Virus record (IMG/VR): IMGVR_UViG_3300020178_000002
Coordinates: 186,001 to 250,000 of that record
DNA: 64,000 bases
Strand: one strand, 5' to 3'
A model generated the notes under the pieces. The model did no database searches, was not told the origin of the DNA, and saw only the letters and a list, made by a program, of their open reading frames with translations. A program made the translations under genes and the position numbers. This document shows, piece by piece, positions 6,933 through 60,470 of this stretch (position 1 is its first letter; every line of letters begins with the position of its first letter).

Positions 6933-6947
6933 TATAAACAAACTATA
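6933..6947 (-). promoter_or_regulatory. putative phage late promoter motif (TATAGTTTGTTTATA)
   Basis: Matches the recurring T(A/T)(A/G)TA(G/A/C)-N5-TTATA motif; lies 36 nt upstream of the 6897 start. Confidence 0.55.
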
Positions 6948-6948
6948 A

Positions 6949-7227
6949 TCAGAGAATTAAAGATCTAGGTTTCTGTTCTTTGACCAGATTTAAGATTTCT
7001 TCTAGGGATTCGGATTCTATTACAGAAGAACCATCAGACCTTAAGATATAGGTTTTGGTTTTCGGAGAGTAAGAAATACAAAGATCTATCTCTTTCTCTG
7101 TTTCGGTTATCTTTTGAAACATGAATAGGAATTCACCAAAGAAAGCTTCACCAGAAGAGACTACCTTATATTTTGCAGTGTTCTCGGACAAGAACTTTCT
7201 AATTTTGAAATCTATCTCTGGAAACAT
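6949..7227 (-). CDS. hypothetical protein (92 aa)
   Basis: ORF in the minus-strand gene run. Confidence 0.6.
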   Translation of the reverse strand: MFPEIDFKIRKFLSENTAKYKVVSSGEAFFGEFLFMFQKITETEKEIDLCISYSPKTKTYILRSDGSSVIESESLEEILNLVKEQKPRSLIL

Positions 7228-7300
7228 AACTAAAGACCATATGTTAAAACCTATTTCTTTAACATATGACCTAAAGGAAAGGGTCTGTCAAATATTTTTA

Positions 7301-7519
7301 TTAAAGACCCATCTCTACTTCCATGATCATACATTCTATTCTTCTGATCTCTTCATCTATCAAGCCTAATTTAAGGGTTTCCATGATATGCTGTTTGTTT
7401 GGTCTCTTATTCGAACCAATCATCTCATAGTATTCCTTATACAGGTTAAAAAGTTTAACTGCTTTAGATTGGGCATTGATGTATCTTGAACATACTTTCT
7501 TAGCTAGTTTATTTACCAT
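7301..7519 (-). CDS. hypothetical protein with KLAKKVCSRY leader
   Basis: Track ORF 7301..7552; the ATG at 7519 follows an AAGGAA RBS and is the likelier start. Confidence 0.6.
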   Translation of the reverse strand: MVNKLAKKVCSRYINAQSKAVKLFNLYKEYYEMIGSNKRPNKQHIMETLKLGLIDEEIRRIECMIMEVEMGL

Positions 7520-7520
7520 T

Positions 7521-7937
7521 TTAAAATTCCTTATCAAAAATAGGTCGGACATTAGGTCTGGGGTATTTTAGTTTGATCTCTGCCTTCACAGGAAGGTAGT
7601 CTCCTACAGAGAGTTTATCGAAAAGAAGGTATGCCCTGTTATATTCTTCGTAAAACCATTTTTGGATTTTCTTTTTCCCTCTGACTTCACTTACAACAAC
7701 AGACACAAGTGTTTCATCATCATGTATAAAATAAACGAATCCCCCAGCCTCTCCTCTTTTGACACCATTTATAAGAGGCTCTATTAAACCCACTGTTTTG
7801 AAATCAAGCATAAGACCATCCCAATTTTTAGATTGGGGTTTTTTTGCCAAAGCTCTCGCCTTGTCTTTAGCCCTACTATTTGATTGTCTCTCAAGACTAG
7901 CAACTCTAATTTCGAGATTCTTTAATATTTCTCTCAT
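7521..7937 (-). CDS. hypothetical protein with LEIRVASLERQS leader
   Basis: 138 aa; start coupled to the upstream gene's stop. Confidence 0.7.
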   Translation of the reverse strand: MREILKNLEIRVASLERQSNSRAKDKARALAKKPQSKNWDGLMLDFKTVGLIEPLINGVKRGEAGGFVYFIHDDETLVSVVVSEVRGKKKIQKWFYEEYNRAYLLFDKLSVGDYLPVKAEIKLKYPRPNVRPIFDKEF

Positions 7938-10498: not shown

Positions 10499-10852
10499 TC
10501 AAATCACCGATATGATATTATTTGAGGGTAAGGTTTGAGCTGGTGGTCTTACTGATATTGTCTGCTCGGCAAAAACCTCACTATCGTCTGCAACCAACAG
10601 AGCCTTATATTCAACAAAGAGTGTCTTCCCAGAGCTATCACTTGGAATCTCTAGTTTAGTGACATACCTATGTGTCTGGTCTGTCTGTTGCATTAAGACA
10701 GGACCGCTTAAAATGGTTCTTACAACCCCATTGTAAAGAAAGAGGGTCGCAGTCACATCTTTAACAGCTAAGGGCTTCGAGTCAGAGTTTAGCCATGAAA
10801 CTTGACAAGGGTGCGATTCACTTGCGGTTGCATTTGAGAAGTAAGTTATCAT
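10499..10852 (-). CDS. hypothetical beta-rich protein, probable virion component
   Basis: AGGAGG RBS; preceded by a promoter-like motif. Confidence 0.7.
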   Translation of the reverse strand: MITYFSNATASESHPCQVSWLNSDSKPLAVKDVTATLFLYNGVVRTILSGPVLMQQTDQTHRYVTKLEIPSDSSGKTLFVEYKALLVADDSEVFAEQTISVRPPAQTLPSNNIISVI

Positions 10853-10879
10853 TAGACCTCCTTTTTAGAAGTCTAATGA

Positions 10880-10893
10880 TATAATAACTATTA
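10880..10893 (-). promoter_or_regulatory. putative late promoter motif (TAATAGTTATTATA, short variant)
   Basis: Same bipartite motif with the spacer shortened by 2 nt. Confidence 0.4.
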
Positions 10894-12808: not shown

Positions 12809-13522
12809 TTAGCTGTAGATTGAGCCATCGTTATTGTAAACAGTGAGAAGTGGAGAGGTTGAGCGAACCCCAGCGAACAGATCGCCATTTACAGCATCTC
12901 TAACTGTGGTCAAGCCTCTTAAAGAACCCTCTGAGAAAGAGATTTTCCAAGAAGCATCATTTGGAACAAGGTTACGCATGGTTGAGCCTAAAGTACCTGG
13001 AGAGATAACAGCAGAGAATGTGCCATTAGCAGCTTGAACAGGAATACCACCTGCAACAGTGTACTCCTCACCAGCAAGAATTGAAAGAATGTCAGTAAGA
13101 ACAGCAGTTGAGTTGCCCTCACCGATACCTGAACCTGCACTCACACCATTACATACACCATTAACAGCAGCAACAGTAAGACTTTGACCAGCACGAACTC
13201 TTGCAAGTAGGCCATCAGCGATCTCTTCAGCTTCAGCTATTGTCAAAGCATCTGCAGCACCATTAGGAACTGCTTCAATGTTTGCAACTAAGTAAGCTAC
13301 AAGACCCTTCGCTTCACGAAGAAACTCTGTTGATGTATCAGCGTTTACTTTAATAATAGGTCTTGAAGCACCTGTAGAGCCTATGTTAGCTACACGAACA
13401 TAGAAAGGACCTTGACCTTTAGGGTCATTCACAAGGTTTCTTTGTGAGTCATTTGGAAAAAGATCTGTAACTTGAACAGACCCATTTTGAATTTCACTTC
13501 TTCGAGCAATTATGAAAGGCAT
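12809..13522 (-). CDS. virion-like structural protein, paralog 1 of a tandem triplet
   Basis: Same shared motifs; AAGGAG RBS; promoter-like motif upstream. Confidence 0.75.
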   Translation of the reverse strand: MPFIIARRSEIQNGSVQVTDLFPNDSQRNLVNDPKGQGPFYVRVANIGSTGASRPIIKVNADTSTEFLREAKGLVAYLVANIEAVPNGAADALTIAEAEEIADGLLARVRAGQSLTVAAVNGVCNGVSAGSGIGEGNSTAVLTDILSILAGEEYTVAGGIPVQAANGTFSAVISPGTLGSTMRNLVPNDASWKISFSEGSLRGLTTVRDAVNGDLFAGVRSTSPLLTVYNNDGSIYS

Positions 13523-14300: not shown

Positions 14301-14683
14301 TTCTTACTCTCTTTCTCTTTTGCAATAAGTGGCTCATAGGATTCTGTGCTCTTACCCTTAGACTTAGCTAGTTTTTGAGCATCTGACCAAGAGTCTACAC
14401 GCTCACCATCTACATTTGGTGCTAGGGTAACACTCGGAGCATCTTTCTTCATTTCATTCTGTCTAACATCAAGCTTTTCATTCTTTTTACGCATTTGCTT
14501 TTTAATGCGTTCATTTTTAGTACTCCAACCATCTCCTTTGAAGACATGGTTTATACATGGTTTAAAAAGCTTCATGTTTTCAGTAGAGCATTCTGGACAA
14601 GGTTGTGGTGTCTTATGTTCAGACATAGAGATATAGCAAACATAGTCATGGCTGCAATTTGAACATTGGTAATAGTATTTCAT
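14297..14683 (-). CDS. FmdB-family zinc-ribbon protein
   Basis: YYYQCSNC...CPEC...FKGDGW. Confidence 0.8.
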   Translation of the reverse strand: MKYYYQCSNCSHDYVCYISMSEHKTPQPCPECSTENMKLFKPCINHVFKGDGWSTKNERIKKQMRKKNEKLDVRQNEMKKDAPSVTLAPNVDGERVDSWSDAQKLAKSKGKSTESYEPLIAKEKESKK

Positions 14684-15081
14684 AGGTTAGCTCCAAAGTA
14701 GTCTCTCAGAACCACATAAACATGCTTACACACCTTATGTGTCCCATCAGGATCTTTTTTATCTGGCTTAGTTGCCGTACCCTTTGTTTTACCATGCAAA
14801 TACTCATTATTGATAGCATGGTACTCAGAGCCTTGATACTTCCAATAGTTGCAAGTACAGGAGAGATATAAGTCTGGAAACTCTTTATCCCCTTTGGCCT
14901 CTACTATAACTTCGTATTCTCCAACCTTAAACACTATGGGCTTCTTAAATACATTTTTCTCGAATTGAGTAGTCACAGCTTTAATAGAGCTTGCGTTATC
15001 TACTACCTTTTTATCTAAGTTTTCTAGTATTTTCGATAGTGTAGCTGAAGTCTTTCTCATATATCCTCCATTATATTTCAA
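14680..15081 (-). CDS. SWIM-type zinc-finger protein
   Basis: LSCTC ... CKH motif. Confidence 0.65.
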   Translation of the reverse strand: MKYNGGYMRKTSATLSKILENLDKKVVDNASSIKAVTTQFEKNVFKKPIVFKVGEYEVIVEAKGDKEFPDLYLSCTCNYWKYQGSEYHAINNEYLHGKTKGTATKPDKKDPDGTHKVCKHVYVVLRDYFGANL

Positions 15082-20232: not shown

Positions 20233-20268
20233 ATGACACCTCTAAACTATCATACCTAGAAGATAGGG

Positions 20269-23456: not shown

Positions 23457-23723
23457 TTAATCTGAATCTGTGACTAGGAAGCCCATCTTTCTTAGTCTTA
23501 GAGATAAGTCTGCTAGCTTTAAAGGGTCATTTGAAGTAACTATCAATCTGTTTTCATTAACAATTTGAACAGACCAGCCTTCATAGATTAAAGACCTAAC
23601 AAATTTCTCTGGGAATGGGGAGTCTTTTGCATGCACAGTAATATCATATTGATGTTGCATCACACTCTCTATCCACTTTTTGACAATATTCTTGGGCAGA
23701 ACAGCTTTTTCTTCTTTATTCAT
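23457..23723 (-). CDS. hypothetical protein (88 aa)
   Basis: ATGA coupling to the upstream gene. Confidence 0.6.
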   Translation of the reverse strand: MNKEEKAVLPKNIVKKWIESVMQHQYDITVHAKDSPFPEKFVRSLIYEGWSVQIVNENRLIVTSNDPLKLADLSLRLRKMGFLVTDSD

Positions 23724-24289
23724 ATGATAACCTTCTTTTGAACAAAAGAATCAGGGTCTGTTCTGAGTAATGTAAGATTGTCCCCAACTATCTTCATAGA
23801 CAGATAAACATCTTCTAAGTTTGGGGCTTGAGATAAGCTTTGCATACATTTTAGAAACCTGTACCTGACTTTCCCTTGAGTGTCTCCAAGCATTCGAGCA
23901 ACATGGCTCTGACTAGAGTACAGGTATAAATAAACAAGAACATCTATGTCTTTTTGGTCAGTGAAGAATCCCCTAAGACGCTTCCTAAGCTCTTCTTCTG
24001 TGTATAGGGAAATTTGAAGATAGATTTTGAGTCTTTCTATACCTCTATTGATACGATAATGAACATTAGGCTGGGTATATCCAAAGATTTTACCTAAGAG
24101 AGCTTGGCTAACACCTTTCAACAAATGAAGCTCTACCATATCTGCTTCTACTGGAGATATTAAACTCATGTGACCTAGTATCTCTTGAACTTGGTAATCC
24201 GTTTCTGGTGCTACATATGTGCTATATGAGGGAAGGCTATTAAGACCTTGATCCGAAGAGAAGATTTCTTCCATTAGTTTAGCATCCAT
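23720..24289 (-). CDS. tandem HTH protein, sigma-70 region-4-like
   Basis: Two HTH-like units: GVSQALLGKIFGYTQPNVHYRINR and SSQSHVARMLGDTQGKVRYRF. Confidence 0.65.
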   Translation of the reverse strand: MDAKLMEEIFSSDQGLNSLPSYSTYVAPETDYQVQEILGHMSLISPVEADMVELHLLKGVSQALLGKIFGYTQPNVHYRINRGIERLKIYLQISLYTEEELRKRLRGFFTDQKDIDVLVYLYLYSSQSHVARMLGDTQGKVRYRFLKCMQSLSQAPNLEDVYLSMKIVGDNLTLLRTDPDSFVQKKVII

Positions 24290-24815
24290 AATCTACAGCC
24301 TCCACAGATAAGCAATTTGCACTTGTTATGATTTCCACACTTCTCATCTTTATGAGTAGCGTATACATTCTTAGGTTTTCTTTTTTAAAGAGAGAGACAA
24401 CTTCAGCTTCAAAGCCCATAAACTCTCCCTCTACAATCTTAACCCTATCCCCAACATCAAACTTAGCACCTAACTCATCTGCTTTTTTTAACATATGGTT
24501 AAGGTCTTTACTCTCAATAACACCTACACTAATAAGACCTGTTCTACTATCTACCTGACTTACTATATTCGAGACTAGATAAGTTCTTTTCAAGTCATAG
24601 TAGTCAGAAGTACTATATCCAGACTTAATGAAGATATATCCTTCCATCATCCAAATGGAACGACTCCCATGTTTAACTATAGGGATAAATATATCTGATT
24701 CTTTAAAAGGAGAGTTCTCAAGCAACAGATCTTTTAAAAGACCATTTGTTGCTGCTTCCTCTCCTTTTGAGGTTATCTCTAGAATAACCCAAGAGGAAAC
24801 TTCCTTCTTTGGCAT
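24279..24815 (-). CDS. NusG/RfaH-family transcription elongation factor
   Basis: N-terminal NGN-like domain (W.IL.....E, EGYIFI) and KOW motif FDVGDRVKIVEGEFMGFEAEV. Confidence 0.8.
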   Translation of the reverse strand: MPKKEVSSWVILEITSKGEEAATNGLLKDLLLENSPFKESDIFIPIVKHGSRSIWMMEGYIFIKSGYSTSDYYDLKRTYLVSNIVSQVDSRTGLISVGVIESKDLNHMLKKADELGAKFDVGDRVKIVEGEFMGFEAEVVSLFKKENLRMYTLLIKMRSVEIITSANCLSVEAVDYGC

Positions 24816-29667: not shown

Positions 29668-29789
29668 GATATTTCATCTCTTTCTTTGATTAAGTGTTTA
29701 CCTTATTATCAATAACGTGCGAGGGGGCATGTAATTTTTTAGCTGGGCTAAAGTATTATTTTATAAAGAAACTAAAAAAGGATTTGAAC

Positions 29790-32797: not shown

Positions 32798-32813
32798 TAT
32801 AAAGAGACTATTA
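32798..32813 (-). promoter_or_regulatory. putative late promoter motif (TAATAGTCTCTTTATA)
   Basis: Full match upstream of the 31230..32756 gene. Confidence 0.6.
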
Positions 32814-35858: not shown

Positions 35859-35874
35859 TATAAAAGGAGTATAA
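35859..35874 (-). promoter_or_regulatory. putative late promoter motif (TTATACTCCTTTTATA)
   Basis: Variant match upstream of the C39 gene. Confidence 0.45.
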
Positions 35875-37169: not shown

Positions 37170-37185
37170 TATAAATAAGGTATTA
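37170..37185 (-). promoter_or_regulatory. putative late promoter motif (TAATACCTTATTTATA)
   Basis: Match upstream of the 35883..37139 gene. Confidence 0.55.
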
Positions 37186-37214
37186 GCTTTTTATAGACTA
37201 TATATAAAATCACC

Positions 37215-39769: not shown

Positions 39770-39807
39770 GACTATTTTAGGTGGAGTATAAATAGACTAC
39801 AAAGACC

Positions 39808-43208: not shown

Positions 43209-43224
43209 TATAAATAGACTATAA
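43209..43224 (-). promoter_or_regulatory. putative late promoter motif (TTATAGTCTATTTATA)
   Basis: Match upstream of the 42613..43167 gene. Confidence 0.6.
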
Positions 43225-45907: not shown

Positions 45908-46282
45908 CTAGCCATTCCATTCAAAATTAAAGAATGGGCTATGGAACATCCCTTTAACTTTCCATTCCAGAAGCCAGCTTTCGTCAAGCCTATCTGAATA
46001 TATTTTTATAGGCTCTTTGTTTTTAATAGCTCTAGCAAACTCATTTTTCTTGACATAGAGCTTCTCATTCTTAGTGACCCTAGTAGGTACACCCGTGCCT
46101 CCTAATGGTCTTAGAAGCAAGTTTGTTGTATTTGGGAAATAAACCCCATCCCCCATATTTTTTCTAAGGAATGTTCTAATGTGCTTGTACCTGAAGTACG
46201 CTTTGTTTTTATTCCCACCAAAGAAAAAAGCTTGCTTCTCTAATCTGGCAATACGACTTTCAAGGTTTGCGATGCTGTCCAT
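45908..46282 (-). CDS. hypothetical protein with LESRIARLEKQA leader
   Basis: GAGGAG RBS before ATG 46282. Confidence 0.7.
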   Translation of the reverse strand: MDSIANLESRIARLEKQAFFFGGNKNKAYFRYKHIRTFLRKNMGDGVYFPNTTNLLLRPLGGTGVPTRVTKNEKLYVKKNEFARAIKNKEPIKIYSDRLDESWLLEWKVKGMFHSPFFNFEWNG

Positions 46283-46330
46283 GATCTCTCCTCTTCTTTT
46301 ATTCAATAAGGAGATGCCATAAAGAGGTTA

Positions 46331-47047
46331 TTAACTAGAAGCCCAGCCAAAGAAAACAAAGCCTTTGGTCTTGTTGCTTAACTTACTTTGAACCAATTTA
46401 CCTCTTACAGTGTAGGTAGCAAGTTTAGAGGAATCTTGATAAGACATACCTCCTTGGTCTTGAACCTTTAAAATACGAATAACTTCGTCTGGGTCTATTC
46501 TGTTTGTAACTTGCATAAGCTCTTTCAAACGAGCAACAGCTTCTTTCTTTGTAGAAAACTTCTCAGAGGTGTTACTAGACCTCACAAAGTAAACATCACC
46601 TGTTGGTTTATGTGTTACAATCTTCCTTTTCCCTGCTGGTGTTGTCAGAACAACACCATCCCTCCAAGAAATCTCAACCTCAAGGATAGCTCCTGCTCTT
46701 TTTCTTTTGAGTTTCATCTTCTCTTCGACAATCCTTCGTGCTTCATTCCCATCTTTAGCTTTAACTTTCACTTCAAAGTCCTTTTCAACAAGCACTTTTT
46801 TTTCAGCGAAAGCTACACAACTAGCGGGATCCCACTTTGTAATTTTAAAATTATTATCCTCAGCATACTGATGAGCTTGTTCTTCAGTCATAACTTGACT
46901 AGTAGCCATGACAAAACTGTCTTTTTCAGCAATAGTTCCAGTATAGCCTCTGCTTCCATACTCATACCTTGCATCCTCCACAAGGGAATTAAATACTTTT
47001 CGAGCATCTGACCCATAGCCAACTTCGATAAATGATTGTGCACCCAT
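46331..47047 (-). CDS. hypothetical phage protein (238 aa)
   Basis: AGGAG RBS; GYTGTIAEK...KW...FFGWASS pattern. Confidence 0.75.
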   Translation of the reverse strand: MGAQSFIEVGYGSDARKVFNSLVEDARYEYGSRGYTGTIAEKDSFVMATSQVMTEEQAHQYAEDNNFKITKWDPASCVAFAEKKVLVEKDFEVKVKAKDGNEARRIVEEKMKLKRKRAGAILEVEISWRDGVVLTTPAGKRKIVTHKPTGDVYFVRSSNTSEKFSTKKEAVARLKELMQVTNRIDPDEVIRILKVQDQGGMSYQDSSKLATYTVRGKLVQSKLSNKTKGFVFFGWASS

Positions 47048-47089: not shown

Positions 47090-47105
47090 TATAAATAGAC
47101 TACAA
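47090..47105 (-). promoter_or_regulatory. putative late promoter motif (TTGTAGTCTATTTATA)
   Basis: Match upstream of the 46331..47047 gene; the 18-mer is identical to that at 39787. Confidence 0.55.
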
Positions 47106-53178: not shown

Positions 53179-53769
53179 ATGATTGTTATACATCATGGGA
53201 GTGGAGTAGAAACAGCTTTAGGAGAGCTGCTAGAAGATAAGAATCTTGTTAAGCCACCTTATAAGGATTTAAAAGCAGATGCTGTGAGAGATCTTGTAGC
53301 TACTTATTCACAAGTATGGCCTATTAGGAATCCTGTAATAGTTGCTGGTCCTCTTGATGAAGCTAATCCCTCAACTTTAGATATTCTGTTGAAAAGAATA
53401 GAAGAACCTCTTGAGGGTTCTCCAGAGTTAATTCTGTGGGCTAGAGATTATGGTTCTGTTCCTCCAACTATTAGATCACGCTGTGGTGAACAGTTTCATT
53501 ATCAGTTTGTAGGTCAACATGAACTATATCAGTTAGCAGAAACGCTCTTAAAAGGACTTTTAGAGAAAAACCTAGTGGTTGTATCGGATTCACTAAGAAA
53601 AGTCGATACAGGTCAATACAGAGCTTTTCTTGAAGCTTATGTGGAAGTTGTTTTAGATAAGAAAGAAGTAGATTTGTATACAGAAGATCTGAAGATGGTT
53701 TTAAGAAGACCTAGAGTAAGTCAAATAGCCTTGTATGGATTCTTTTTAGGGGGTCTGAAATGTCAGTAA
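53179..53769 (+). CDS. clamp-loader delta-prime-like subunit (HolB-like)
   Basis: LLKRIEEP...LIL......VPPTIRSRC; the likely start is ATG 53179. Confidence 0.7.
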   Translation: MIVIHHGSGVETALGELLEDKNLVKPPYKDLKADAVRDLVATYSQVWPIRNPVIVAGPLDEANPSTLDILLKRIEEPLEGSPELILWARDYGSVPPTIRSRCGEQFHYQFVGQHELYQLAETLLKGLLEKNLVVVSDSLRKVDTGQYRAFLEAYVEVVLDKKEVDLYTEDLKMVLRRPRVSQIALYGFFLGGLKCQ

Positions 53770-54677
53770 TGGTTTTACATGGGAACTCAAAGAGTTATAT
53801 CCAGATTAGATCTCAAGAGATTCTTGAAGAATACAGAGCGAATGGTTATGAAGTCAGAGATCTTTCCCCAAAGAGTGAACTCTCTCTGGAAGAGTGTTTC
53901 AGCTCTGGTTTGTTTGACACAAGCCCTATTTTAGTTTTTGTTAAGAACCCTATGAAAGTTAAAGGTCTTAGTGCTTACTTGAAAGATACAAGGGGTTGTG
54001 AGGTTCTTGTATGTTATGACAAGGATAAATTGCCGAAGATGTTAACAGGCTATATGTCTCAATGTTTTACAGAGCCTAAATACGACAATCAGAAATTAGA
54101 TTGGTGTGCTAAGTTTGTATCAGACTATGTAGAAAGGCACGGGAAGAAGATTTCGAAAGATCTTTCAAAGGCTGTTGTTTCAAAAGTAGGTACAGATCTT
54201 GGTGTCCTTCGATTTGAGGTCTTGAAATATGTCATGTCAAGCGAGGGGGAAGATATTACTCCACGAACCATTGCAGGGAACTTGGGGGATTTGACAGGGC
54301 CAGAGTCTTCTGATTTGATTGACTCTATCATAAGCAGAGACTCGAGAAGATTTCTTAAGGTATGTGCCAAGATAGAAAAGAGTAGTTCAACAGATCAAAC
54401 GATGGCTGTTTGTAATGGTCTTTTGTTCTACACTTTAAGACAGTTATTTGACGTAGGTGTTTTGCTTGCAGAAAAATATACACCCGATCAGATTGCAAAT
54501 GATTTAGGAAAGAACCCTTGGTTGGTACAAAATATATTAAAGCCTCAAGTTGAGTCATTGGGTCTTGAAAGAATTATTCTTTTAATAGAGTCTCTATATA
54601 ACTCAGAGAATTCTGTTCTGAAAGGTTCACGAAACCCTTGGAGCAAATTCAAGTCAGAAATCTTAAGAAACATTTAA
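53760..54677 (+). CDS. clamp-loader delta-like subunit (HolA-like)
   Basis: VG.DLG.L..E..K lid motif, PWLV...., E..LKG; 305 aa. Confidence 0.7.
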   Translation: MSVMVLHGNSKSYIQIRSQEILEEYRANGYEVRDLSPKSELSLEECFSSGLFDTSPILVFVKNPMKVKGLSAYLKDTRGCEVLVCYDKDKLPKMLTGYMSQCFTEPKYDNQKLDWCAKFVSDYVERHGKKISKDLSKAVVSKVGTDLGVLRFEVLKYVMSSEGEDITPRTIAGNLGDLTGPESSDLIDSIISRDSRRFLKVCAKIEKSSSTDQTMAVCNGLLFYTLRQLFDVGVLLAEKYTPDQIANDLGKNPWLVQNILKPQVESLGLERIILLIESLYNSENSVLKGSRNPWSKFKSEILRNI

Positions 54678-54715
54678 ATGAAGCCCACAAGGTTATAGTG
54701 GGCGAAGGATATGAA

Positions 54716-57391
54716 ATGAAGGTTCAATTCTCAGACCACGCAAATTCTTTGTTGAAATCTTATTACATGAAAGATAGTGATGCTTCTGTTGAAGATGCTT
54801 TTAAAAGAGCCTCTTTTGCATACACACCGAACAAGGAGTTGGCTCAAAGAATATATGAGTATGCTTGTAAGGGCTGGTTTATGTTTAGCTCTCCAATTCT
54901 ATCTAATGCTGAAAGTTCAGGTATGCCTATTTCTTGCTTTCTCTCGTATGTAGAAGACACAGTAGAAGGGTTGATTGAACACACGGAAGAATTAAGATGG
55001 ATGTCTGTGATGGGTGGTGGAGTAGGAGGCCATTGGGATCATGTTCGTTCAGTGAGCAAGAAATCTCCTGGTCCTATTCCTTTCTTAAAGACTGTTGATT
55101 CAGATATGGTTGCATACAGACAAGGATTAACTCGAAAGGGTTCTTATGCAGCATATATGGATGTGAGTCACCCAGACATTATTGAGTTCTTGAACTTGAG
55201 ATTGCCAACAGGTGGAGACCCAGCTAGGAAATGTTTTAATCTTAACAATGCAGTAAATCTGACTGATGAGTTCATGAGTGCAGTTATGGCTGGTGATAAG
55301 TGGGATCTTGTAGACCCTAAGGACAAGACTGTTCGTAATACAGTAGATGCTCGTGAGCTTTGGCAAAGAATCCTTGAGGTTCGCTTTAGGACAGGAGAAC
55401 CTTATCTTAACTTCATTGACGAGGCGAACCGACACCTACCTCAACCTCTCAAAGATAAGGGCTTGAAGATTCATGGTTCAAACCTTTGTGTTCGAGGTGA
55501 CACACAAGTACTTACTCGTGATGGTTATTTCCAGATCTCATCTTTGGATAATCAAGATGTTGAGGTTTGGAACGGAAAAGAATGGTCTATGACCACCGTT
55601 GTCCAAACAGGAGAAGATCAAGAGATCCTTGAGGTTGTTCTTGACAATGGGACTACTCTTTACACAACACCTTATCACAAGTTTTATGACCATAAGGGTC
55701 ATGTGGCAGAGGCCAAAGATTTAACCACTTCCACAAAGCTCTTGAAGTTTGAGATGCCTGTGGTTGAGGGTAGGGGCGATTGGGAGAACGCTTATTCTTG
55801 TGGGTTCTTCACAGGAGACGGGACATACAACCACCTCCATCAACCAATATCTTATCTTTACGGTAAGAAGAAGGCATTACTTGACAGGGTCGCCACACCT
55901 CTTTGTCGAGTCCACACAGGTTCTAAATCGGATCGGTTTTCAGTTCTCCATGACAAGTCCGAAATCAAAGCAAAGTACGAAGTGCCTCTTGGTATGTCCT
56001 TAAGCACTCGCTTAAAGTGGCTCTCGGGACTCTTAGATGCAGATGGTTGCGTGGCTAGGAATGGGCTAAATCAAAGCTTACAGCTTGCGTCTACAAATCG
56101 AGACTTTCTCACCGATCTGTGTCTCATGTTAAATACACTTGGAGTTCAGCCCAGAGTGTCAGACTTCATGCCTGAGAGAACGGTAAACTTTGGCTCGGAG
56201 AGGGGTGGTGAGTATCGTTGTAAGGAAGCATGGAGGATCTTAATCAACTCTAACGATACTCAAAAGCTACTTGGATTGGGCTTGGAAACTCATCGTCTAG
56301 TCTTGAAGGAGCACAAGCCACAAAGGTCAGCTTCAAGGTTTGTTCGTGTCCTTAGTGTCTCTAAGTCACAGGATGCAGACACTTATTGTTTCAACGAACC
56401 GAAGAGACACATGGGGGTGTTTAATGGTGTTCTTACAGGCAACTGTAATGAAATTCATCTCCCAACAGGTAAAGGTAGGTCTGCTGTTTGTTGCCTTTCA
56501 AGCCTTAATGTGGAGATGTTTGATGAGTGGAAAGACACAACTATTGTTGAAGACTTGATTGAGTTTCTTGATGATGTTTTACAGTACTTCATTGAGAATG
56601 CTCCCCCTCAGTTAGGGAAAGCTATCTACAGTGCCAAGAGAGAAAGGTCTTTGGGTCTGGGTACTATGGGTTTCCATGCTTACCTCCAAAAGAAGGGTCT
56701 TCCCTTTGAGTCTGTCTTTGCTGTTTCAGCTAATCGTAAGATTTACTCAACCATTAAGGAAAGGGCAGTTGCTTCTTCAAAGCGTCTAGCAGAAATCAAA
56801 GGTGAGTATCTTGATGGTATTGGATCTGGCATGAGAAATAGCCACCTGCTTGCTATTGCTCCAAATGCTAACTCAGCTATTATTCTTGATACAAGCCCAA
56901 GCATTGAACCTTGGAAGTCAAATGCTTTCACACATAGAACCAGAGCAGGTTCTTTTCTTCAGTTTAATAAGCATCTAATGGCTGTGCTTGAAAAGCATAG
57001 TCCAGAAGAAGATAAGCAAGAGTGGATTGACTCACAGGTTCAGTCTATTATTTTAGCTCAAGGTTCTGTGCAACATTTAGAGTATTTAAGTGACTTTGAG
57101 AAAAATACTTTTAAGACAGCATTTGAGATTGACCAGATGTGGATAGTGGAACACGCTTCTGTAAGACAGGAGTGGGTCTGTCAGGGTCAATCTGTAAACT
57201 TGTTCTTCCCTGCTGGTTCAGACAAGAACTATGTGAACGCTGTTCACCTTTCAGCATGGAAGAAGAAGCTCAAGGGTCTGTATTATCTCCGAACCAATGC
57301 AGGTGTAGTTGCTGACAAGGTTAGTGAGAAGATTGAGCGTAAGGCATTGAAGGATTATGACATTGATGAATGTATGAGCTGTCAGGGTTAG
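54716..57391 (+). CDS. nrdA: ribonucleotide reductase class Ia alpha subunit (intein-containing, no ATP cone)
   Basis: SSPIL, ISCF, GGGVG, R.G..A.Y...HPD, SNL|C NEI, LA.APNA, CQGQS.NL, LYYLR, C-terminal ECMSCQG. Confidence 0.95.
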   Translation: MKVQFSDHANSLLKSYYMKDSDASVEDAFKRASFAYTPNKELAQRIYEYACKGWFMFSSPILSNAESSGMPISCFLSYVEDTVEGLIEHTEELRWMSVMGGGVGGHWDHVRSVSKKSPGPIPFLKTVDSDMVAYRQGLTRKGSYAAYMDVSHPDIIEFLNLRLPTGGDPARKCFNLNNAVNLTDEFMSAVMAGDKWDLVDPKDKTVRNTVDARELWQRILEVRFRTGEPYLNFIDEANRHLPQPLKDKGLKIHGSNLCVRGDTQVLTRDGYFQISSLDNQDVEVWNGKEWSMTTVVQTGEDQEILEVVLDNGTTLYTTPYHKFYDHKGHVAEAKDLTTSTKLLKFEMPVVEGRGDWENAYSCGFFTGDGTYNHLHQPISYLYGKKKALLDRVATPLCRVHTGSKSDRFSVLHDKSEIKAKYEVPLGMSLSTRLKWLSGLLDADGCVARNGLNQSLQLASTNRDFLTDLCLMLNTLGVQPRVSDFMPERTVNFGSERGGEYRCKEAWRILINSNDTQKLLGLGLETHRLVLKEHKPQRSASRFVRVLSVSKSQDADTYCFNEPKRHMGVFNGVLTGNCNEIHLPTGKGRSAVCCLSSLNVEMFDEWKDTTIVEDLIEFLDDVLQYFIENAPPQLGKAIYSAKRERSLGLGTMGFHAYLQKKGLPFESVFAVSANRKIYSTIKERAVASSKRLAEIKGEYLDGIGSGMRNSHLLAIAPNANSAIILDTSPSIEPWKSNAFTHRTRAGSFLQFNKHLMAVLEKHSPEEDKQEWIDSQVQSIILAQGSVQHLEYLSDFEKNTFKTAFEIDQMWIVEHASVRQEWVCQGQSVNLFFPAGSDKNYVNAVHLSAWKKKLKGLYYLRTNAGVVADKVSEKIERKALKDYDIDECMSCQG
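55487..56443 (+). mobile_element. intein with LAGLIDADG homing endonuclease (319 aa)
   Basis: Begins C-V-R-G-D-T; block B TTPYHKF; CGFFTGDG and LSGLLDADG; ends GVLTGN before the +1 Cys. Confidence 0.93.
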
Positions 57392-57452
57392 TATTTTATT
57401 AGTTTCTTTATCTAAAATTCTATAACACATAGAAAAGATAAAGGACTGAAAA

Positions 57453-57863
57453 ATGATAGAAGTAGAATACCAACATGACCAATATGCTAGCATTCCTCAA
57501 CCACCTAGCAAGTCTAAAAAGATGAGTAAGGCTCAACTTATTAAGTTGATCAATGAATACTCAAATAGAGCAGATGAGCTAGCAGAACAGCTTGAATCAA
57601 AAGACCCTCTTTATGAGAGGAGAGATTCAGCTAACTACTCAAACTTCAAAGTAGCTAAAGTACTACATAAGATGAACTTTGAGGATAAACCTAATGCAGC
57701 ATACCCCCCAAGAATCTGGGTAGACATCTATGTTTATTCACTAGAAAATGGTGGTGAAACCTTTTTCCGAAGTTCGATAATCATAAATGCAAAGGATTTC
57801 TTGTTCCACACAGGAGCAAGAACCTTAAGCAACAAGATCAGAGCACTTAAGGGCTTACTTTAG
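57453..57863 (+). CDS. hypothetical protein (136 aa)
   Basis: AAGGA RBS. Confidence 0.65.
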   Translation: MIEVEYQHDQYASIPQPPSKSKKMSKAQLIKLINEYSNRADELAEQLESKDPLYERRDSANYSNFKVAKVLHKMNFEDKPNAAYPPRIWVDIYVYSLENGGETFFRSSIIINAKDFLFHTGARTLSNKIRALKGLL

Positions 57864-59527
57864 AACCTGCCACCCTCTTCAGCAGGCTTGCTGTATTTGA
57901 GAGATAGATTCTTAGCTATTGTTTCAATAACTTCAGTGTTCTCAGCAAGCATACGACCAGCTTCACCATAGATACCTCTAAGTACCTCGTTAAACTGAGA
58001 ATCGTTAAGAGTCCACATGTCTCTTTCCAACTTAGCTTTGGTAGAGATGGGGTCTACATTAAGAAGCTCTAAGATAACATCAATGTCCAAAGAACCTTTT
58101 TGGTAAAGGTTGAACAGAGCATCAAATGTATCTTGGTTGTCTCGAAGCCCAAGGCGAGTAAAGCTAAGGGTTGGGTGTAGAACTATCTCTTCCCCATCTT
58201 CATCTTCTTCGATGAAGCCCATACGCTTACACATAGGCTTTAGGATATTTTCCTCTACCATTTCTTGGAGGACTTCTCTCATAAGCATATAACGTGTATT
58301 GATGACTTCAAGATTGATTCTATCTCCAGAATAGCTTGACTCTCCAGATAGAAGAGACTCTGTGACACCAAGACCAGCATACATTTGTCGGTCTGTCATA
58401 TCATACTCACCAGAGAGTTCAAGCAGACGAGAATCAGCACCCATCTCTTCCCAAGAAACTTGGAAGTTGGCAATGATTGAGTAGTCTGGGTCTTGGAGAG
58501 CAATGTCTACTTGTTCTCTCAATGCTTCAACATCAGCAGCATCCATATCCTCTGCATAGACAAGTCGAATAGGTGTCATGTGTCTTGAAGCGATAGAGGT
58601 TTGTGCCTGTCTGAGTTTGTCTCTGTAAACCAAGATCCTTAAACAACGCTCAAGCATTGAGTGTCCTCTGGGTTCATATTGAGATTTCTTACGAGCCATG
58701 TAGTAAACAAAAGACCCTTGATCTGGATCTGTGTTTAGTCTGATGTTTCTACCTTCTCTAATTGCTTCTACAACATCTTCAGGCATTGACTCTACAACCC
58801 TTAATGCAGAGGGGTCTTGTAAAGTTGCTCTTTCTACAATGTCTTTAGTCTTACTGTCAGGTATAAGCTCTATAATTTTTTCACTTGTGAAAGGAAAGCT
58901 TTCCATATGAACTTGCTCTGGAGGTAGGACTCTTAGACCTGTCCAGCCTTTGTAGTTCTTCTTGAGCCATCTGTAAGCTCTAACATTTGAATCCGAGTAT
59001 TCTTCCCACTCTGTTGCAGCACTGCCATCTTCCCTAAGTACATTTCGTTCTTTATGTGTAACAGACTTAGGCATATCAGGGTTATTATCTTCACAGAACA
59101 CAAAAACTTCACCTAAGAGATTGTATTCATGGAGGATTTCTATGAGTCTGTGCAAGAGACCTGTTCTTTTAGCCCACTTCTCACAGAATCTGAGTGCTTC
59201 ATTGGCCATTTCATGGTTTCTAGCTTTTGGTAATCCAAGTCTGATTTTACTAAGAGGCAATTCAGTGTGCAGGTCAACAGCTTGACCAACAAAGGGGTCT
59301 GTTCTATAGAAGAATCTAAAATAGTTTCTTTGCTCATCTTGGCTTTGGGGTAGTTCTAAAAAGTCGGTAGACAATTCAGGACTGTAGAAGTTTCCCCCAG
59401 AGCCCATCATAGTTCCATTTGTAGTCATAGCAACTTTGACTCTGGACTTCATATCTTTGAGATCAAACTTTCTAGTGGTTGCTTTTGATCTTGATTGAAC
59501 TTTCCCAATAATATCTTCCTCACTCAT
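57860..59527 (-). CDS. probable phage portal protein
   Basis: 555 aa helical protein with DPFV..AVDLH.ELP, L.P..V, ..RG.S.L..C and PIRL segments reminiscent of large-phage portals. Confidence 0.55.
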   Translation of the reverse strand: MSEEDIIGKVQSRSKATTRKFDLKDMKSRVKVAMTTNGTMMGSGGNFYSPELSTDFLELPQSQDEQRNYFRFFYRTDPFVGQAVDLHTELPLSKIRLGLPKARNHEMANEALRFCEKWAKRTGLLHRLIEILHEYNLLGEVFVFCEDNNPDMPKSVTHKERNVLREDGSAATEWEEYSDSNVRAYRWLKKNYKGWTGLRVLPPEQVHMESFPFTSEKIIELIPDSKTKDIVERATLQDPSALRVVESMPEDVVEAIREGRNIRLNTDPDQGSFVYYMARKKSQYEPRGHSMLERCLRILVYRDKLRQAQTSIASRHMTPIRLVYAEDMDAADVEALREQVDIALQDPDYSIIANFQVSWEEMGADSRLLELSGEYDMTDRQMYAGLGVTESLLSGESSYSGDRINLEVINTRYMLMREVLQEMVEENILKPMCKRMGFIEEDEDGEEIVLHPTLSFTRLGLRDNQDTFDALFNLYQKGSLDIDVILELLNVDPISTKAKLERDMWTLNDSQFNEVLRGIYGEAGRMLAENTEVIETIAKNLSLKYSKPAEEGGRF

Positions 59528-59769
59528 TTGCTCTTCCTTTTCTTAATTGCTTTCAGATAGCTCTTAATTATTTTTTTAAGTAAAACAATATGATCTGGGT
59601 TTCCTTCAAAAAAGGCAGCCCAAGACCCACCTTTTTTTTGATATACCAGAGATACCTTCTCCAGAACATCTTGTGAAGGCTTAGAAAAGCCATAGATAGT
59701 GAAGATCTTTTTTATAATCCTAAGATCTGCTCTTTCTTGCTCTCTGAATTCATATCTTTTTTTAGTCAT
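59524..59769 (-). CDS. hypothetical protein (81 aa)
   Basis: GGAGGAG RBS; coupled to the portal-like gene. Confidence 0.65.
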   Translation of the reverse strand: MTKKRYEFREQERADLRIIKKIFTIYGFSKPSQDVLEKVSLVYQKKGGSWAAFFEGNPDHIVLLKKIIKSYLKAIKKRKSK

Positions 59770-59808
59770 ATCTCCTCCTTTATTATACTAGAGGAGATAA
59801 AAACTATA

Positions 59809-60321
59809 TCAAGACTCTACAACTTTTAAGTACAATTTTTTCCACTGACCCATTTTTGGTTCGGGGTGAGAGGAAAGCATATTAAAAGCTTCCCAGAGCT
59901 TAAGGGAATCTTCTAAAGGTATATCTTTCATTTTATAACTGATGGTCATTTCAGTTCTTTTCTTCAATATATCAATGTCAGAAACTGCATCTTGGCTTGT
60001 TTCTTCAAAGATGTCTTCTTTCTTTTTATATACCCAAGGAGTCAAGTTGTACTTGGACTCTAATAGATAACAGGCTTTATTAAACTCAACTCCCTCTATC
60101 TCCATAACAGTAGATATAGAGTCTCTCGTTTTACCACAGGCAAAGCAATACCATGAGTTAGACTCTGGGTATGCTCTGGCACTAGGTGCGTTGTCTGAAC
60201 CATCACCATGCAAGTCACAACGGAACTGTTGTTCTTTCTCAACGTTGATAACATCATAACCATATCCACTAAGCACAGACATGATTGATATTTTTTCTTT
60301 TATACGCTCAGATCTTTTCAA
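59809..60321 (-). CDS. stand-alone CHC2 zinc finger (DnaG primase Zn-binding domain)
   Basis: FRCDLH...PS......WYCFACG...D.I......EG..F..A. Confidence 0.8.
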   Translation of the reverse strand: MKRSERIKEKISIMSVLSGYGYDVINVEKEQQFRCDLHGDGSDNAPSARAYPESNSWYCFACGKTRDSISTVMEIEGVEFNKACYLLESKYNLTPWVYKKKEDIFEETSQDAVSDIDILKKRTEMTISYKMKDIPLEDSLKLWEAFNMLSSHPEPKMGQWKKLYLKVVES

Positions 60322-60454
60322 TACTGAATGCCTTTCTTAGGTTTCTGGAAAAAAGGATAGCTTCCAAGTAAGATTGGAAGGTAAGGCTCTTGTTTTCAAA
60401 TTTAACTATGTACATCTTAAAAATCACTTTCAGCTATGGTGGGCTTAAAGATCT

Positions 60455-60470
60455 TTATAGAAAGTTTATA
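60455..60470 (+). promoter_or_regulatory. putative late promoter motif (TTATAGAAAGTTTATA)
   Basis: Plus-strand match upstream of the 60517 operon. Confidence 0.55.

What the first reader, a model, noticed from the sequence alone, without database searches (positions are those of the whole stretch)
6933..60470. Bipartite 16-bp promoter-like motif T(A/T)(A/G)TA(G/A/C)-N5-TTATA
It occurs in the sense orientation about 10-60 nt upstream of starts at 6933, 10880 (short), 13563, 15091, 27987, 32798, 35859, 37170, 43209, 46318 (variant), 47090 and 60455 (+). These units are mostly structural-looking or tag-bearing genes; I did not see it before recA, dnaX, thyX or nrdA/B. It is not a sigma70 -35/-10 or the T4 TATAAATA promoter, so it may be a new late promoter class, possibly read by the tandem-HTH protein at 23720 (inference).
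Basis: partly seen in the sequence, partly recalled or inferred. Interest (0 to 1): 0.65.

Follow-up and report, generated by a model that had tools for sequence, protein, structure and literature searches.

The report
Huge-phage promoter motif, probably late
A 16-base AT-rich motif (about TWRTAGTYTNTTTATA) sits about 40 bases upstream of dozens of genes in this uncultured 312-kb salt-marsh phage and its relatives; it behaves like a phage-specific promoter that fits no described promoter class, and which protein reads it is not settled.

Summary

A weight matrix finds 65 sites:
- Density is 2.7 per kb in intergenic DNA and 0.04 per kb in ORFs.
- In co-directional gaps, 33 sites are sense and 3 antisense.
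- The motif lies a median 39 nt upstream of a start codon that has a Shine-Dalgarno site.
- The spacer between the two halves is strictly 4 bp.

The motif is conserved in a related 376-kb phage (median 55% protein identity), often before orthologous genes (Fisher p = 1e-9). It is also present in every fetched relative locus whose tandem-HTH homologue is at least 59% identical.

It is most likely a core promoter read by host RNA polymerase with a phage-encoded specificity factor. "Late" is plausible but unproven. The motif heads baseplate, fibre and sheath units and many genes of unknown function. A second motif class heads the ligase, a helicase and small-gene clusters.

The tandem-HTH protein has a sigma region-4 fold and invariant recognition helices. 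A divergent ECF-like sigma factor encoded outside the window is an equally good candidate. No transcription start sites are available.

The parts
6933..6948 (-). P1 site TTATAGTTTGTTTATA, 35 nt upstream of the ATG of gene 5944-6897
10878..10893 (-). P1 variant TAATAGTTATTATATC, 25 nt upstream of gene 10499-10852
   Evidence: 15.8 bits
13563..13578 (-). P1 site, 40 nt upstream of gene 12809-13522; the orthologue in relative G001 also has P1
15091..15106 (-). P1 site, 30 nt upstream of the ATG at 15060 (gene 14680-15060); the orthologue in G001 also has P1
27987..28002 (-). weak P1 variant TAATAAGTTTTCTATA, 25 nt upstream of gene 27293-27961; below the matrix cut-off
29762..29777 (-). P1 site TTTTAGTTTCTTTATA, 94 nt upstream of gene 28252-29667; a class-2 motif lies between it and the gene
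32798..32813 (-). P1 site, 41 nt upstream of gene 31230-32756
35859..35874 (-). P1 site, 27 nt upstream of gene 34248-35831 (weak, sub-threshold Peptidase_C39-like match at the N-terminus); metatranscriptome contigs lie on this gene
37170..37185 (-). P1 site, 30 nt upstream of gene 35883-37139 (weak leads to a beta-helix or pentapeptide-repeat-like fold); back-to-back with the next site, 5 bp apart
37191..37206 (+). P1 site TTATAGACTATATATA, 52 nt upstream of gene 37259-38074 (class II aminoacyl-tRNA-synthetase-like)
39787..39802 (-). orphan P1 site TTGTAGTCTATTTATA with no nearby downstream start codon; its 5' half lies in the 3' arm of an 11-bp-stem hairpin (39797-39821)
43209..43224 (-). 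P1 site, 41 nt upstream of gene 42613-43167
46318..46333 (-). P1 variant TAATAACCTCTTTATG, 35 nt upstream of gene 45908-46282
47090..47105 (-). P1 site, 42 nt upstream of gene 46331-47047
54583..54598 (+). weak P1-like variant TAATAGAGTCTCTATA inside the end of gene 53760-54677, 117 nt before the likely nrdA ATG at 54716; not conserved in G001; doubtful
57397..57412 (+). P1 variant TATTAGTTTCTTTATC, 40 nt upstream of gene 57453-57863
60455..60470 (+). pattern match TTATAGAAAGTTTATA, 46 nt upstream of gene 60517-60927 (followed by a DNA methyltransferase); low matrix score; the G001 orthologue has a strong P1
61924..61939 (+). P1 variant TTGTAGTTTTTTAATG, 27 nt upstream of the 876-aa PAP2-domain gene that starts at 61967
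23720..24289 (-). candidate reader: 189-aa protein with two helix-turn-helix domains; the N-terminal one has a sigma region-4 fold; both predicted recognition helices are invariant in the 10 aligned homologues
24279..24815 (-). NusG/KOW-like protein immediately upstream of the tandem-HTH gene; the order clamp loader, KOW-like protein, tandem-HTH is kept in distant relatives

Best explanation
The motif, called P1 here, has the consensus tT-W-R-T-A-G-T-Y-T-N-T-T-T-A-T-A. It is the core promoter of a major class of transcription units in a clade of uncultured huge phages from salt-marsh and marine samples.

It works at the DNA level. It is a 16-bp element made of two related half-sites (TWRTA and TTATA, offset by 11 bp, about one helical turn) with a strictly fixed spacer. 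It lies immediately upstream of the transcription start.

From the position-specific composition downstream of the motif, the start is probably about 11 nt past its last base. That would give 5' leaders of roughly 17-40 nt that still contain the Shine-Dalgarno sequence.

No phage RNA polymerase was detected, so the enzyme is most likely the host core polymerase redirected by a phage-encoded specificity factor. There are two candidates: the tandem region-4-like protein at window 23720-24289, and the divergent ECF-like sigma factor at genome 5319-5933.

The class is probably middle or late, because it heads tail, baseplate and fibre units and many clade-specific genes. A second motif class (P2) heads the ligase, a helicase and small-gene clusters.

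Shown: the statistics, geometry and conservation of the motif, and the folds of the two candidate proteins. Inferred: promoter function, the start position, the timing, and which factor reads it.
For: Enrichment:
- The pattern occurs 11 times against 0.92 expected in the window and 31 against 3 in the genome.

Placement:
- Sites are 65-fold denser in intergenic than in coding DNA.
- Sense outnumbers antisense 33 to 3 in co-directional gaps, and no site lies in a convergent gap.
- The median distance to a start codon is 39 nt, with a minimum of 27.

Geometry:
- A 4-bp spacer gives 33 hits against 4 in the control. All other spacers are at or near background.

Core promoter rather than an upstream site:
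- At the 27-nt sites the Shine-Dalgarno sequence begins about 14 nt after the motif, so the start must lie within about 12 nt of it.
- At window 37170/37191 two sites stand back to back, 5 bp apart, which leaves no room for other promoters.
- The flanks show no other conserved block.
- In both genomes C is enriched at +6/+7, T at +8 to +10 and A at +11 past the motif.

Conservation:
- The related 376-kb phage G001 (45% GC; 209 of 339 proteins have a BLAST hit; median 55% identity) has 38 pattern hits against 2 in the control.
- 15 orthologous gene pairs carry the motif in both genomes, against about 3.4 expected (Fisher p = 1e-9).
- 16 of 16 fetched loci whose tandem-HTH homologue is at least 59% identical have 2-9 sites each and none in reversed controls. 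Several of these loci are near-duplicates of one another.
- Relatives at 48-55% identity show a variant, TAGTAN-N4-TTTATN, before genes that include an Mtd_N fibre gene.

No phage polymerase found:
- Pfam models for the beta subunit, the beta-prime catalytic domain and T7-type polymerase gave no match.

Candidate factors:
- The N-terminal domain of the tandem-HTH protein matches sigma region 4 at Z 8-9.8 and rmsd 1.2-2.3 A. Its recognition helices are invariant.
- The ECF-like sigma matches TIGR02937 over its full length, as do 16 of 18 family members. Its fold matches ECF sigma factors over the full length.

Gene content:
- P1 heads the unit containing baseplate J, both giant fibre-like genes and the unit containing the sheath gene.
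- P2 heads the ligase and a helicase.
Against: - No transcription start site or expression timing is available. The one metatranscriptome that holds the phage gives only short contigs inside two P1-headed genes and at 39781-40001.
- Some P1 sites precede genes that do not look structural. The portal and large-terminase genes have no P1.
- Neither candidate factor fits cleanly. The tandem-HTH protein has no region-2 domain for melting DNA. An ECF-type sigma with a region 4 would normally need a -35 element 16-17 bp upstream of its -10 element, and P1 lacks one.
- The portal's closest relative in the phage-record collection searched (LR745208.1, 54% GC) has no match to the pattern, yet it keeps divergent homologues of both factors.
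- ORF boundaries come from a home-made gene caller.
Confidence: 0.7

Rival explanations
1. P1 is simply the promoter type of the unknown host, read by a housekeeping or alternative host sigma factor. The phages copy it, and no phage factor is involved.
For: - No factor has been tied to P1, and the host is unknown.
- The 3' half is AT-rich and resembles a -10 element.
- The E. coli-type sigma-70 consensus is depleted rather than enriched in window 20-40 kb (33 sites against 50 +/- 5.7 in shuffles). The host's own consensus could therefore differ from it.
Against: - The geometry, a 16-bp contiguous element with a strict 4-bp spacer and no -35 block 16-18 bp upstream, matches no described housekeeping sigma.
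- The motif is kept almost unchanged in phages whose GC content ranges from 38% to 47%. These phages always encode the sigma-like proteins.
- A second, different phage-wide motif class also exists. That argues for a phage-run cascade.
Confidence: 0.13
2. P1 is not the promoter itself. It is either an operator for a phage DNA-binding regulator laid over otherwise unconserved promoters, or an RNA-level element in 5' leaders, such as a processing or translational-control site.
For: - Sense orientation and a fixed distance to start codons are also expected of a leader-RNA element.
- A tandem-HTH protein is a typical operator binder.
- At 39787 the motif overlaps a hairpin.
Against: - Nothing else is conserved around the sites that could serve as the promoter.
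- The back-to-back pair with a 5-bp gap leaves no upstream room.
- Sites stand at the heads of strand-switch units, where some promoter must exist: 17 lie in divergent gaps.
- Half-sites one helical turn apart with a rigid spacer point to double-stranded DNA recognition.
Confidence: 0.1
3. P1 is read by an unrecognised phage-encoded RNA polymerase, either single-subunit or of a new kind, hidden among the many unannotated giant ORFs. In that case it would work like a T7-type compact promoter that ends in TATA just before the start.
For: - P1 resembles the layout of the T7 promoter: TAATA, a short spacer, then TATA (from my own knowledge of the T7 consensus).
- Seven of the ten proteins over 1,090 aa that I scanned have no Pfam match.
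Against: - No match to T7-type polymerase, or to the beta or beta-prime domains, in G000. Beta-prime was also searched in G001.
- The only D-x-D-G-D-type motif conserved in both genomes is in a 1,363-aa protein inside a probable structural block, and it has no PDB sequence match.
- The base after the motif is not a conserved G.
- Relatives encode sigma-like and NusG-like proteins, which fits use of the host polymerase.
Confidence: 0.06
4. The motif is a compositional or chance artefact of AT-rich intergenic DNA.
For: - Intergenic DNA is AT-rich.
- In two very AT-rich unrelated viral records the pattern is no more frequent than in reversed controls.
Against: - Shuffled and reversed controls give about one-tenth of the observed count.
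- Spacer, orientation and distance to start codons are all strict.
- The motif is conserved before orthologous genes at 55% protein identity.
Confidence: 0.01

Closest known systems
Single-element middle/late promoters of coliphage phiEco32, read by the phage sigma factor gp36 (tAATGTAtA, start 6-8 bp downstream; PMC8948821)
   Same: - A compact, AT-rich, phage-specific element next to the start, with no -35 element.
- Found before middle and late genes.
- Read by host core polymerase with a divergent phage sigma factor.
- Conserved, as here, only within a subgroup of related phages.
   Different: - P1 is 16 bp and bipartite with a rigid 4-bp spacer. The phiEco32 element is 9 bp and single.
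- The sequences are unrelated.
- The sigma-like candidate here has a region 4, which gp36 lacks according to that paper.
Bipartite late promoters of phage 7-11, read by its sigma factor gp47 (GTAAtg-N16-aCTA; PMC8948821)
   Same: Both involve a phage-encoded ECF-like sigma factor with a region 4, and both are phage-specific promoters before late genes.
   Different: The two blocks there are 16 bp apart, the usual -35/-10 geometry. In P1 the blocks are 4 bp apart. The second motif class seen in this genome (P2) is closer to that layout.
Sigma-54 (-24/-12) promoters, TGGCAC-N5-TTGCW (from my own knowledge)
   Same: - The same 6 + 5 + 5 = 16-bp layout, with two blocks one helical turn apart.
- If the start is about 11 nt past P1, as the downstream composition suggests, the element would span about -26 to -11, as sigma-54 promoters do.
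   Different: - P1 has no GG or GC dinucleotides.
- No Sigma54 DNA-binding domain was found in either phage genome.
- The start position is only inferred.
T4-type late promoters (TATAAATA, read by gp55 with gp33 and the sliding clamp; from my own knowledge)
   Same: - An AT-rich, TATA-like element with no -35 block.
- It precedes structural genes.
- The candidate factor gene lies next to the clamp-loader gene.
   Different: - P1 is twice as long and has an obligatory upstream half.
- TATAAATA can appear only on the opposite strand, and only at sites with A at motif position 10 (about a third of sites). Site orientation rules that strand out.
- No gp55 homologue was tested for or found.
T7-family single-subunit polymerase promoters (from my own knowledge)
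   Same: A contiguous element of about 17 bp that begins TAATA and ends TATA.
   Different: - No T7-type polymerase gene was found.
- There is no conserved G at the position after the motif.

Membership tests
Sigma-70-type -35/-10 promoter | Two hexamers separated by 16-18 bp | tested here: not met
   The two conserved blocks are separated by exactly 4 bp (33 hits against 4 in the control; other spacers at or near background). No conserved block lies 16-18 bp upstream.
Sigma-70-type -35/-10 promoter | A -10 hexamer of the form TAnnnT, with the start about 7 nt downstream | tested here: inconclusive
   TTTATA, or TATA plus two free bases, is only loosely like a -10 element. The start is not mapped. 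Composition suggests about 11 nt past the motif.
T4-type late promoter (gp55) | A single 8-bp element, TATAAATA, on the sense strand | tested here: not met
   The sense strand reads TTTATA, preceded by an obligatory TWRTAG. The orientation bias of 33 to 3 excludes the opposite strand.
T7-like single-subunit polymerase promoter | A phage-encoded T7-type RNA polymerase | tested here: not met
   PF00940 gives no match in the complete genome. The control genomes also lack this family, so sensitivity is unverified.
T7-like single-subunit polymerase promoter | A conserved initiating G directly after the TATA | tested here: not met
   The first base after the motif is A 30%, C 12%, G 31%, T 27% over 180 distinct sites.
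Sigma-54 -24/-12 promoter | GG at -24 and GC at -12 | tested here: not met
   The consensus has T-W-R and T-A-T at the corresponding positions.
Sigma-54 -24/-12 promoter | A sigma-54 protein (RpoN DNA-binding domain) | tested here: not met
   PF04552 gives no match in G000 or G001. A host sigma-54 cannot be excluded.
phiKZ/AR9-type promoters of phage multisubunit polymerases | Phage genes for beta-like and beta-prime-like subunits | tested here: not met
   PF00562 (G000) and PF00623 (G000 and G001) give no match. Very divergent subunits could escape Pfam models.
Promoter read by a phage-encoded sigma-70-family factor (phiEco32 / 7-11 kind) | The phage encodes a sigma-70-family protein | tested here: met
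   Genome 5319-5933 (-) matches TIGR02937 over positions 8-162 of 165 (E = 1.7e-5, below the curated cut-off). 16 of 18 family members match it (best E = 1e-8). Foldseek top hits are ECF sigma factors over the full length.
Promoter read by a phage-encoded sigma-70-family factor (phiEco32 / 7-11 kind) | Transcription from the motif depends on that factor | not testable with these tools
   This needs in vitro transcription or reporter assays.
Promoter (generic) | Primary transcript 5' ends map just downstream of the motif | tested here: inconclusive
   The only RNA run gives contigs inside genes 34248-35831 and 35883-37139 and over 39781-40001. Contigs cannot show transcript ends.

The most novel reading that the evidence does not exclude
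The 189-aa protein made of two region-4-like helix-turn-helix domains, with no region 2, is a new kind of promoter-specificity subunit. Each domain would read one TWRTA-type half-site on the same face of the DNA, in a -24/-12-like position. The protein would recruit host core polymerase, possibly together with its conserved NusG/KOW-like neighbour. This would define a sigma-like factor architecture and promoter geometry not described before, shared by a large clade of huge marine and salt-marsh phages.
Probability: 0.2. Interest if true: 0.8.

Novelty: new variant of a known kind. Interest (0 to 1): 0.55.

Why it matters
Almost nothing is known about how uncultured huge phages organise transcription. 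This work gives a precise, testable promoter consensus with about 65 sites in one genome. The consensus is shared by a clade whose tandem-HTH family has at least 81 protein clusters, on contigs up to 375 kb.

It also gives a second motif class and two concrete candidate factors that can be expressed and tested without culturing the host.

The motif splits the genome into transcription units. It flags dozens of unannotated genes as co-regulated and probably late or structural. It could also serve as a marker for this phage clade in metagenomes.

Tried and rejected
- Near-identity DNA search of the phage-record collection found nothing.
- A search for relatives with the 418-aa protein returned only an identical fragment.
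- An exact-pattern scan of viral contigs gave mostly single chance hits, but it did lead to relative G001.
- LR745208.1 shares a portal at 71% identity but has no pattern match at 54% GC. A look through 41 kb of it showed no obvious replacement motif.
- The Tunturi_5 annotation was used to transfer functions. Only the terminase, portal, polymerase, clamp loader, a primase-like protein and an ATPase mapped. Its sigma factor, antiterminator and major head protein gave no BLAST match.
- PHROG and Pfam scans of 26 P1-headed genes gave almost nothing. The timing class therefore rests on a few recognisable structural genes.
- The Atlas look-up of the 418-aa protein gave only weak leads to beta-helix or pentapeptide-repeat folds, not a capsid protein.
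- PDB sequence searches with the two candidate factors and with the 1,363-aa protein found nothing significant.
- Laying the metatranscriptome showed presence only, with no transcript ends.
- I looked for co-variation between the factors and the motifs. The sigma's predicted region-4 helix differs between G000 and G001, while the recognition helices of the tandem-HTH protein do not. However, the second motif class differs only modestly between the two genomes, so this was too weak to assign readers.
- An archaeal TATA/BRE reading was considered and rejected. At the 27-nt sites the Shine-Dalgarno sequence would fall upstream of a start placed about 25 nt after the TATA, and the gene content is bacterial in type.
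- No complex prediction was run, because the host polymerase is unknown and gene adjacency alone is not sufficient reason.

Full report
Context.
The window is bases 186,001-250,000 of a 312,136-bp IMG/VR virus record with direct terminal repeats and 38% GC. DNA runs that hold it are salt-marsh and marine metagenomes.
- Its portal is 71% identical to that of the uncultured 485-kb phage LR745208.1, 37% to Tunturiibacter phage Tunturi_5 and 27% to Bacillus phage G.
- It is therefore an uncultured huge phage with a contractile tail. Sheath, baseplate-J and Mtd_N fibre domains are present.
- My simple gene caller gives 339 ORFs in 93 alternating strand blocks. Only 6.3% of the genome is intergenic.

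The observation.
It gives 31 in the genome against 3 in the reversed sequence.
- Iterating a weight matrix from these hits converges on tT-W-R-T-A-G-T-Y-T-N-T-T-T-A-T-A, with 65 sites of at least 13 bits.
27987 is a weaker variant.

- 53 of 65 sites are intergenic, at 2.69 against 0.041 per kb.
- In gaps between co-directional genes, 33 sites are sense and 3 antisense. Another 17 lie in divergent gaps and none in convergent gaps.
- 49 sites lie within 130 nt upstream of a sense start codon (median 39 nt, interquartile range 34-43).
- The spacer between the halves is rigid. TWRTAV-N4-TTTATN occurs 33 times against 4 in the control, while spacers of 0-3 and 5-9 bp are at or near background.
- The halves are related to each other: TWRTA at positions 1-5 and TTATA at 12-16, an 11-bp offset.
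- Positions 2-3 are interdependent. AA and TG are over-represented and AG is almost absent.

Why it is a core promoter.
The shortest motif-to-ATG distance is 27 nt, and those sites still have a clear AAGGAG about 14 nt after the motif. The transcript must therefore start within about 12 nt of the motif's 3' end. That excludes an upstream activator site placed at -35 or beyond.
- At window 37170 (-) and 37191 (+) two sites stand back to back with 5 bp between them, each facing its own gene. This leaves no room for other promoters.
- Nothing else is conserved in 30 nt on either side, apart from a weak downstream signature present in both genomes. That signature is G depletion, C at +6/+7, T at +8 to +10 and A at +11 past the motif.
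- I read this as a pyrimidine-purine start near +11. If so, the motif would span about -26 to -11. This is inference, not measurement.
- The only RNA library that holds the phage gives short contigs inside the two P1-headed genes 34248-35831 and 35883-37139 and over 39781-40001. It gives none on the plus-strand genes between them. Contigs cannot show transcript ends or levels.

Conservation.
An exact-pattern scan of IMG/VR led to a 375,691-bp record, G001 (45% GC), with 38 pattern matches against 2 in the control.
- G001 is a true relative: 209 of 339 proteins have a BLAST hit, at a median 55% identity. It has 75 matrix sites with an even tighter consensus.
- Among 179 orthologue pairs, 15 carry the motif before both genes, 14 only in G001, 6 only in G000 and 144 in neither (Fisher p = 1e-9). 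Distances are often equal, for example 39 and 39 nt, or 115 and 113 nt.
- All 16 IMG/VR loci whose tandem-HTH homologue is at least 59% identical carry 2-9 sites in 10-20 kb and none in reversed controls. Their GC content ranges from 38% to 47%. Several of these loci are near-duplicates of one another.
- More distant members (48-55% identity) show fewer sites, with a shifted upstream half (TAGTAN-N4-TTTATN). These sites again lie about 35-50 nt before genes, including an Mtd_N fibre gene.
- LR745208.1 (54% GC) has no match.

Other promoter classes.
Among the 138 gene heads that have an upstream gap of at least 40 nt and no P1, a second recurrent motif stands out. It is a run of C, about 10-12 nt, then TTTGATAAKWAGRGTA, ending about 32-46 nt before start codons. 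It is usually paired with an AAAGGAWTT-type ribosome-binding site.
- There are about 27 well-placed sites in G000. A looser pattern (C-run plus GATAA) gives 34 matches against 11 in the reversed control.
- G001 has a related form, CCCC-N14-GATAAGGGGTTAC.
- It heads small-gene clusters such as genome 137-145 kb, as well as the ATP-dependent ligase and the helicase at window 828-3017.
- Sites matching the E. coli-type sigma-70 consensus are depleted in window 20-40 kb: 33 against 50 +/- 5.7 in shuffles.
- The genome thus appears to run on at least two phage-specific promoter classes.

Timing.
For a late or middle class:
- P1 stands at the head of the 41-kb plus-strand unit that contains baseplate J and several proteins of 1,000-1,900 aa.
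- It stands directly before both roughly 2,300-aa fibre-like genes, one of which has an Mtd_N domain.
- It heads the unit that contains the sheath gene, and it stands before the gene following the sheath gene.
- 0 of 16 P1-headed first genes scanned have any PHROG match, which is typical of lineage-specific virion proteins. By contrast, 5 of 10 P2-headed genes scanned have one.

Against a purely late, structural class:
- P1 also precedes a class II aminoacyl-tRNA-synthetase-like gene, a PAP2-domain gene and a methyltransferase unit.
- It lies two genes upstream of the DNA polymerase gene.
- The portal and large-terminase genes lack it.

I rate "middle or late" at about 0.55.

Who reads it.
No phage polymerase was detected. 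Pfam models for the beta subunit, the beta-prime catalytic domain and T7-type polymerase gave no match. The only D-x-D-G-D-type motif conserved in both genomes is in a 1,363-aa protein within a probable structural block, and that protein has no PDB sequence match.

Two sigma-like candidates exist.

- Pfam gives sub-threshold Sigma70_r4 matches to both halves.
- An AlphaFold model (mean pLDDT 78.6) has two four-helix HTH domains.
- Residues 25-94 match region 4 of many ECF and other sigma factors at Z 8-9.8 and rmsd 1.2-2.3 A. Residues 104-177 match generic HTH domains at Z about 6.
- Both predicted recognition helices are invariant in 10 homologues down to 52% identity.
- The family has at least 81 clusters. 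Nearly all are about 183-191 aa long (a few are shorter fragments), and they lie on contigs up to 375 kb.
- The gene order clamp loader, NusG/KOW-like protein, this protein is kept in distant members.
- Two similar domains in tandem and two similar half-sites one helical turn apart make a tidy match. However, the protein has no region 2 with which to melt DNA.

(b) Genome 5319-5933 (-), 204 aa, outside the window.
- It aligns with TIGR02937 over the full length (E = 1.7e-5, below the curated cut-off).
- 16 of 18 family members match that model, the best at 1e-8.
- Its model matches ECF sigma factors in polymerase complexes over 160-190 columns.
- It is 56% identical in G001.
- A sigma factor with a region 4 normally reads two blocks 16-17 bp apart, as shown for phage 7-11. 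A sigma factor lacking region 4 reads a single element, as shown for phiEco32 (PMC8948821). On that logic the ECF-like sigma suits the second motif class better than P1, but this is only an argument by analogy.

Both proteins are present in G001, which has P1. Both are divergent (33-36% identity) in LR745208.1, which lacks P1. Phyletic patterns therefore do not separate them. Other HTH proteins exist: a 144-aa triple-HTH protein, and a Myb-plus-HTH protein at genome 120025-120618.

- tandem region-4 protein, alone or with a partner: about 0.3;
- ECF-like sigma: about 0.3;
- a host factor: about 0.15;
- something else: the rest.

Comparison with known systems.
- P1 fails the defining features of sigma-70 -35/-10 promoters (spacer), T4 late promoters (sequence, strand, length), T7-type promoters (no polymerase, no initiating G), sigma-54 promoters (no GG/GC, no RpoN domain) and phiKZ/AR9 promoters (no beta or beta-prime genes).
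- It works most like the compact, phage-specific, sigma-dependent promoters of phiEco32-like phages. Geometrically it resembles the -24/-12 layout.
- The one paper in the held library that I read on promoters in a relative, on phage G, reports only generic PhagePromoter predictions and no comparable consensus (PMC12484599).
- I therefore class P1 as a new variant of a known kind: a phage-specific promoter class with an unusual, well-defined geometry in an unstudied clade.

Limits.
- There is no start-site or timing data.
- The host is unknown.
- ORF calls are home-made.
- The weight matrix was trained on the same genome in which sites were counted. Orientation, position and the second genome were not used in training.
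- Most downstream genes have no assigned function.

Noticed in passing
window 3061 (-), 29710 (-), 45815 (-); genome-wide about 27 sites, e.g. genome 137026 (-) and 137090 (+): A second promoter-like class (P2): a run of C, about 10-12 nt, then TTTGATAAKWAGRGTA, ending 32-46 nt before start codons that have an AAAGGAWTT-type ribosome-binding site. It heads small-gene clusters, the ligase and the helicase at window 828-3017. Relative G001 has a variant, CCCC-N14-GATAAGGGGTTAC. The upstream C-run and the downstream G-rich block could also pair as a hairpin.
   Followed up: partly
genome 5319-5933 (-), i.e. L011:5319-5933, outside the window: A divergent ECF-like sigma factor (204 aa). It has no Pfam match, but it aligns to TIGR02937 over the full length and its fold matches ECF sigma factors. 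It is 56% identical in G001. Its predicted region-4 recognition helix differs between the two phages.
   Followed up: yes
window 24279-24815 (-): A phage-encoded NusG/KOW-like protein (178 aa) between the clamp-loader gene and the tandem-HTH gene. This order is kept in distant relatives, which suggests a transcription module tied to the replication genes.
   Followed up: partly
L006:1318-1752 (-) (genome about 297.7-298.1 kb) and genome 120025-120618 (-): Further small DNA-binding proteins: a 144-aa protein with three Sigma70_r4_2-like helix-turn-helix repeats, and a 197-aa Myb-plus-HTH protein. In distant relatives a triple-HTH protein of similar size lies near the clamp-loader module.
   Followed up: partly
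window 39781-39821 (-): An orphan P1 site with no nearby downstream ORF start. Its first half forms the 3' arm of an 11-bp-stem hairpin just after gene 39808-40434. It might drive a non-coding or antisense RNA across 39568-39786.
   Followed up: no
window 20000-39999: Sites matching the E. coli-type sigma-70 consensus are fewer than in shuffled sequence (33 against 50 +/- 5.7). Terminator-like hairpins are enriched (21 against 12.3 +/- 2.8).
   Followed up: no
genome 252721-255843 (-) (beyond the window's end at genome 250000); window 47584-48663 (-) and 54638-57391 (+): The large terminase is 1,040 aa. Its match to the Tunturi_5 terminase is split into residues 26-112 and 522-976, so it may carry an insertion of about 400 aa, possibly an intein or a homing-endonuclease domain. 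A homing-endonuclease-like gene sits next to nrdB. NrdA (about 890-917 aa) has PHROG matches in separate N- and C-terminal blocks, which may also mean an insertion.
   Followed up: no
genome 307.1-310.2 kb (L027:9398-12433): A cluster of six tRNA genes: Met, Thr, Lys, two Arg and Glu.
   Followed up: partly
window 35883-37139 (-) and genome 57200-58807 (-): Two P1-headed genes may encode pentapeptide-repeat or beta-helix-like proteins. One has a Pfam Pentapeptide match (E = 2e-14). The other has only weak Atlas leads.
   Followed up: partly
genome 61133-65224 (-): A 1,363-aa protein with a conserved stretch around a D-M-D-G-D motif that is identical in G001. It has no Pfam or PDB sequence match and its function is unknown. 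I checked it only as a possible polymerase signature.
   Followed up: partly
LR745208.1 (loci L028, L189-L191): The portal's closest relative in the phage-record collection searched is 54% GC, against 38% here. It has no match to the P1 pattern and carries two paralogues of the tandem-HTH protein (36% and 33% identity).
   Followed up: partly
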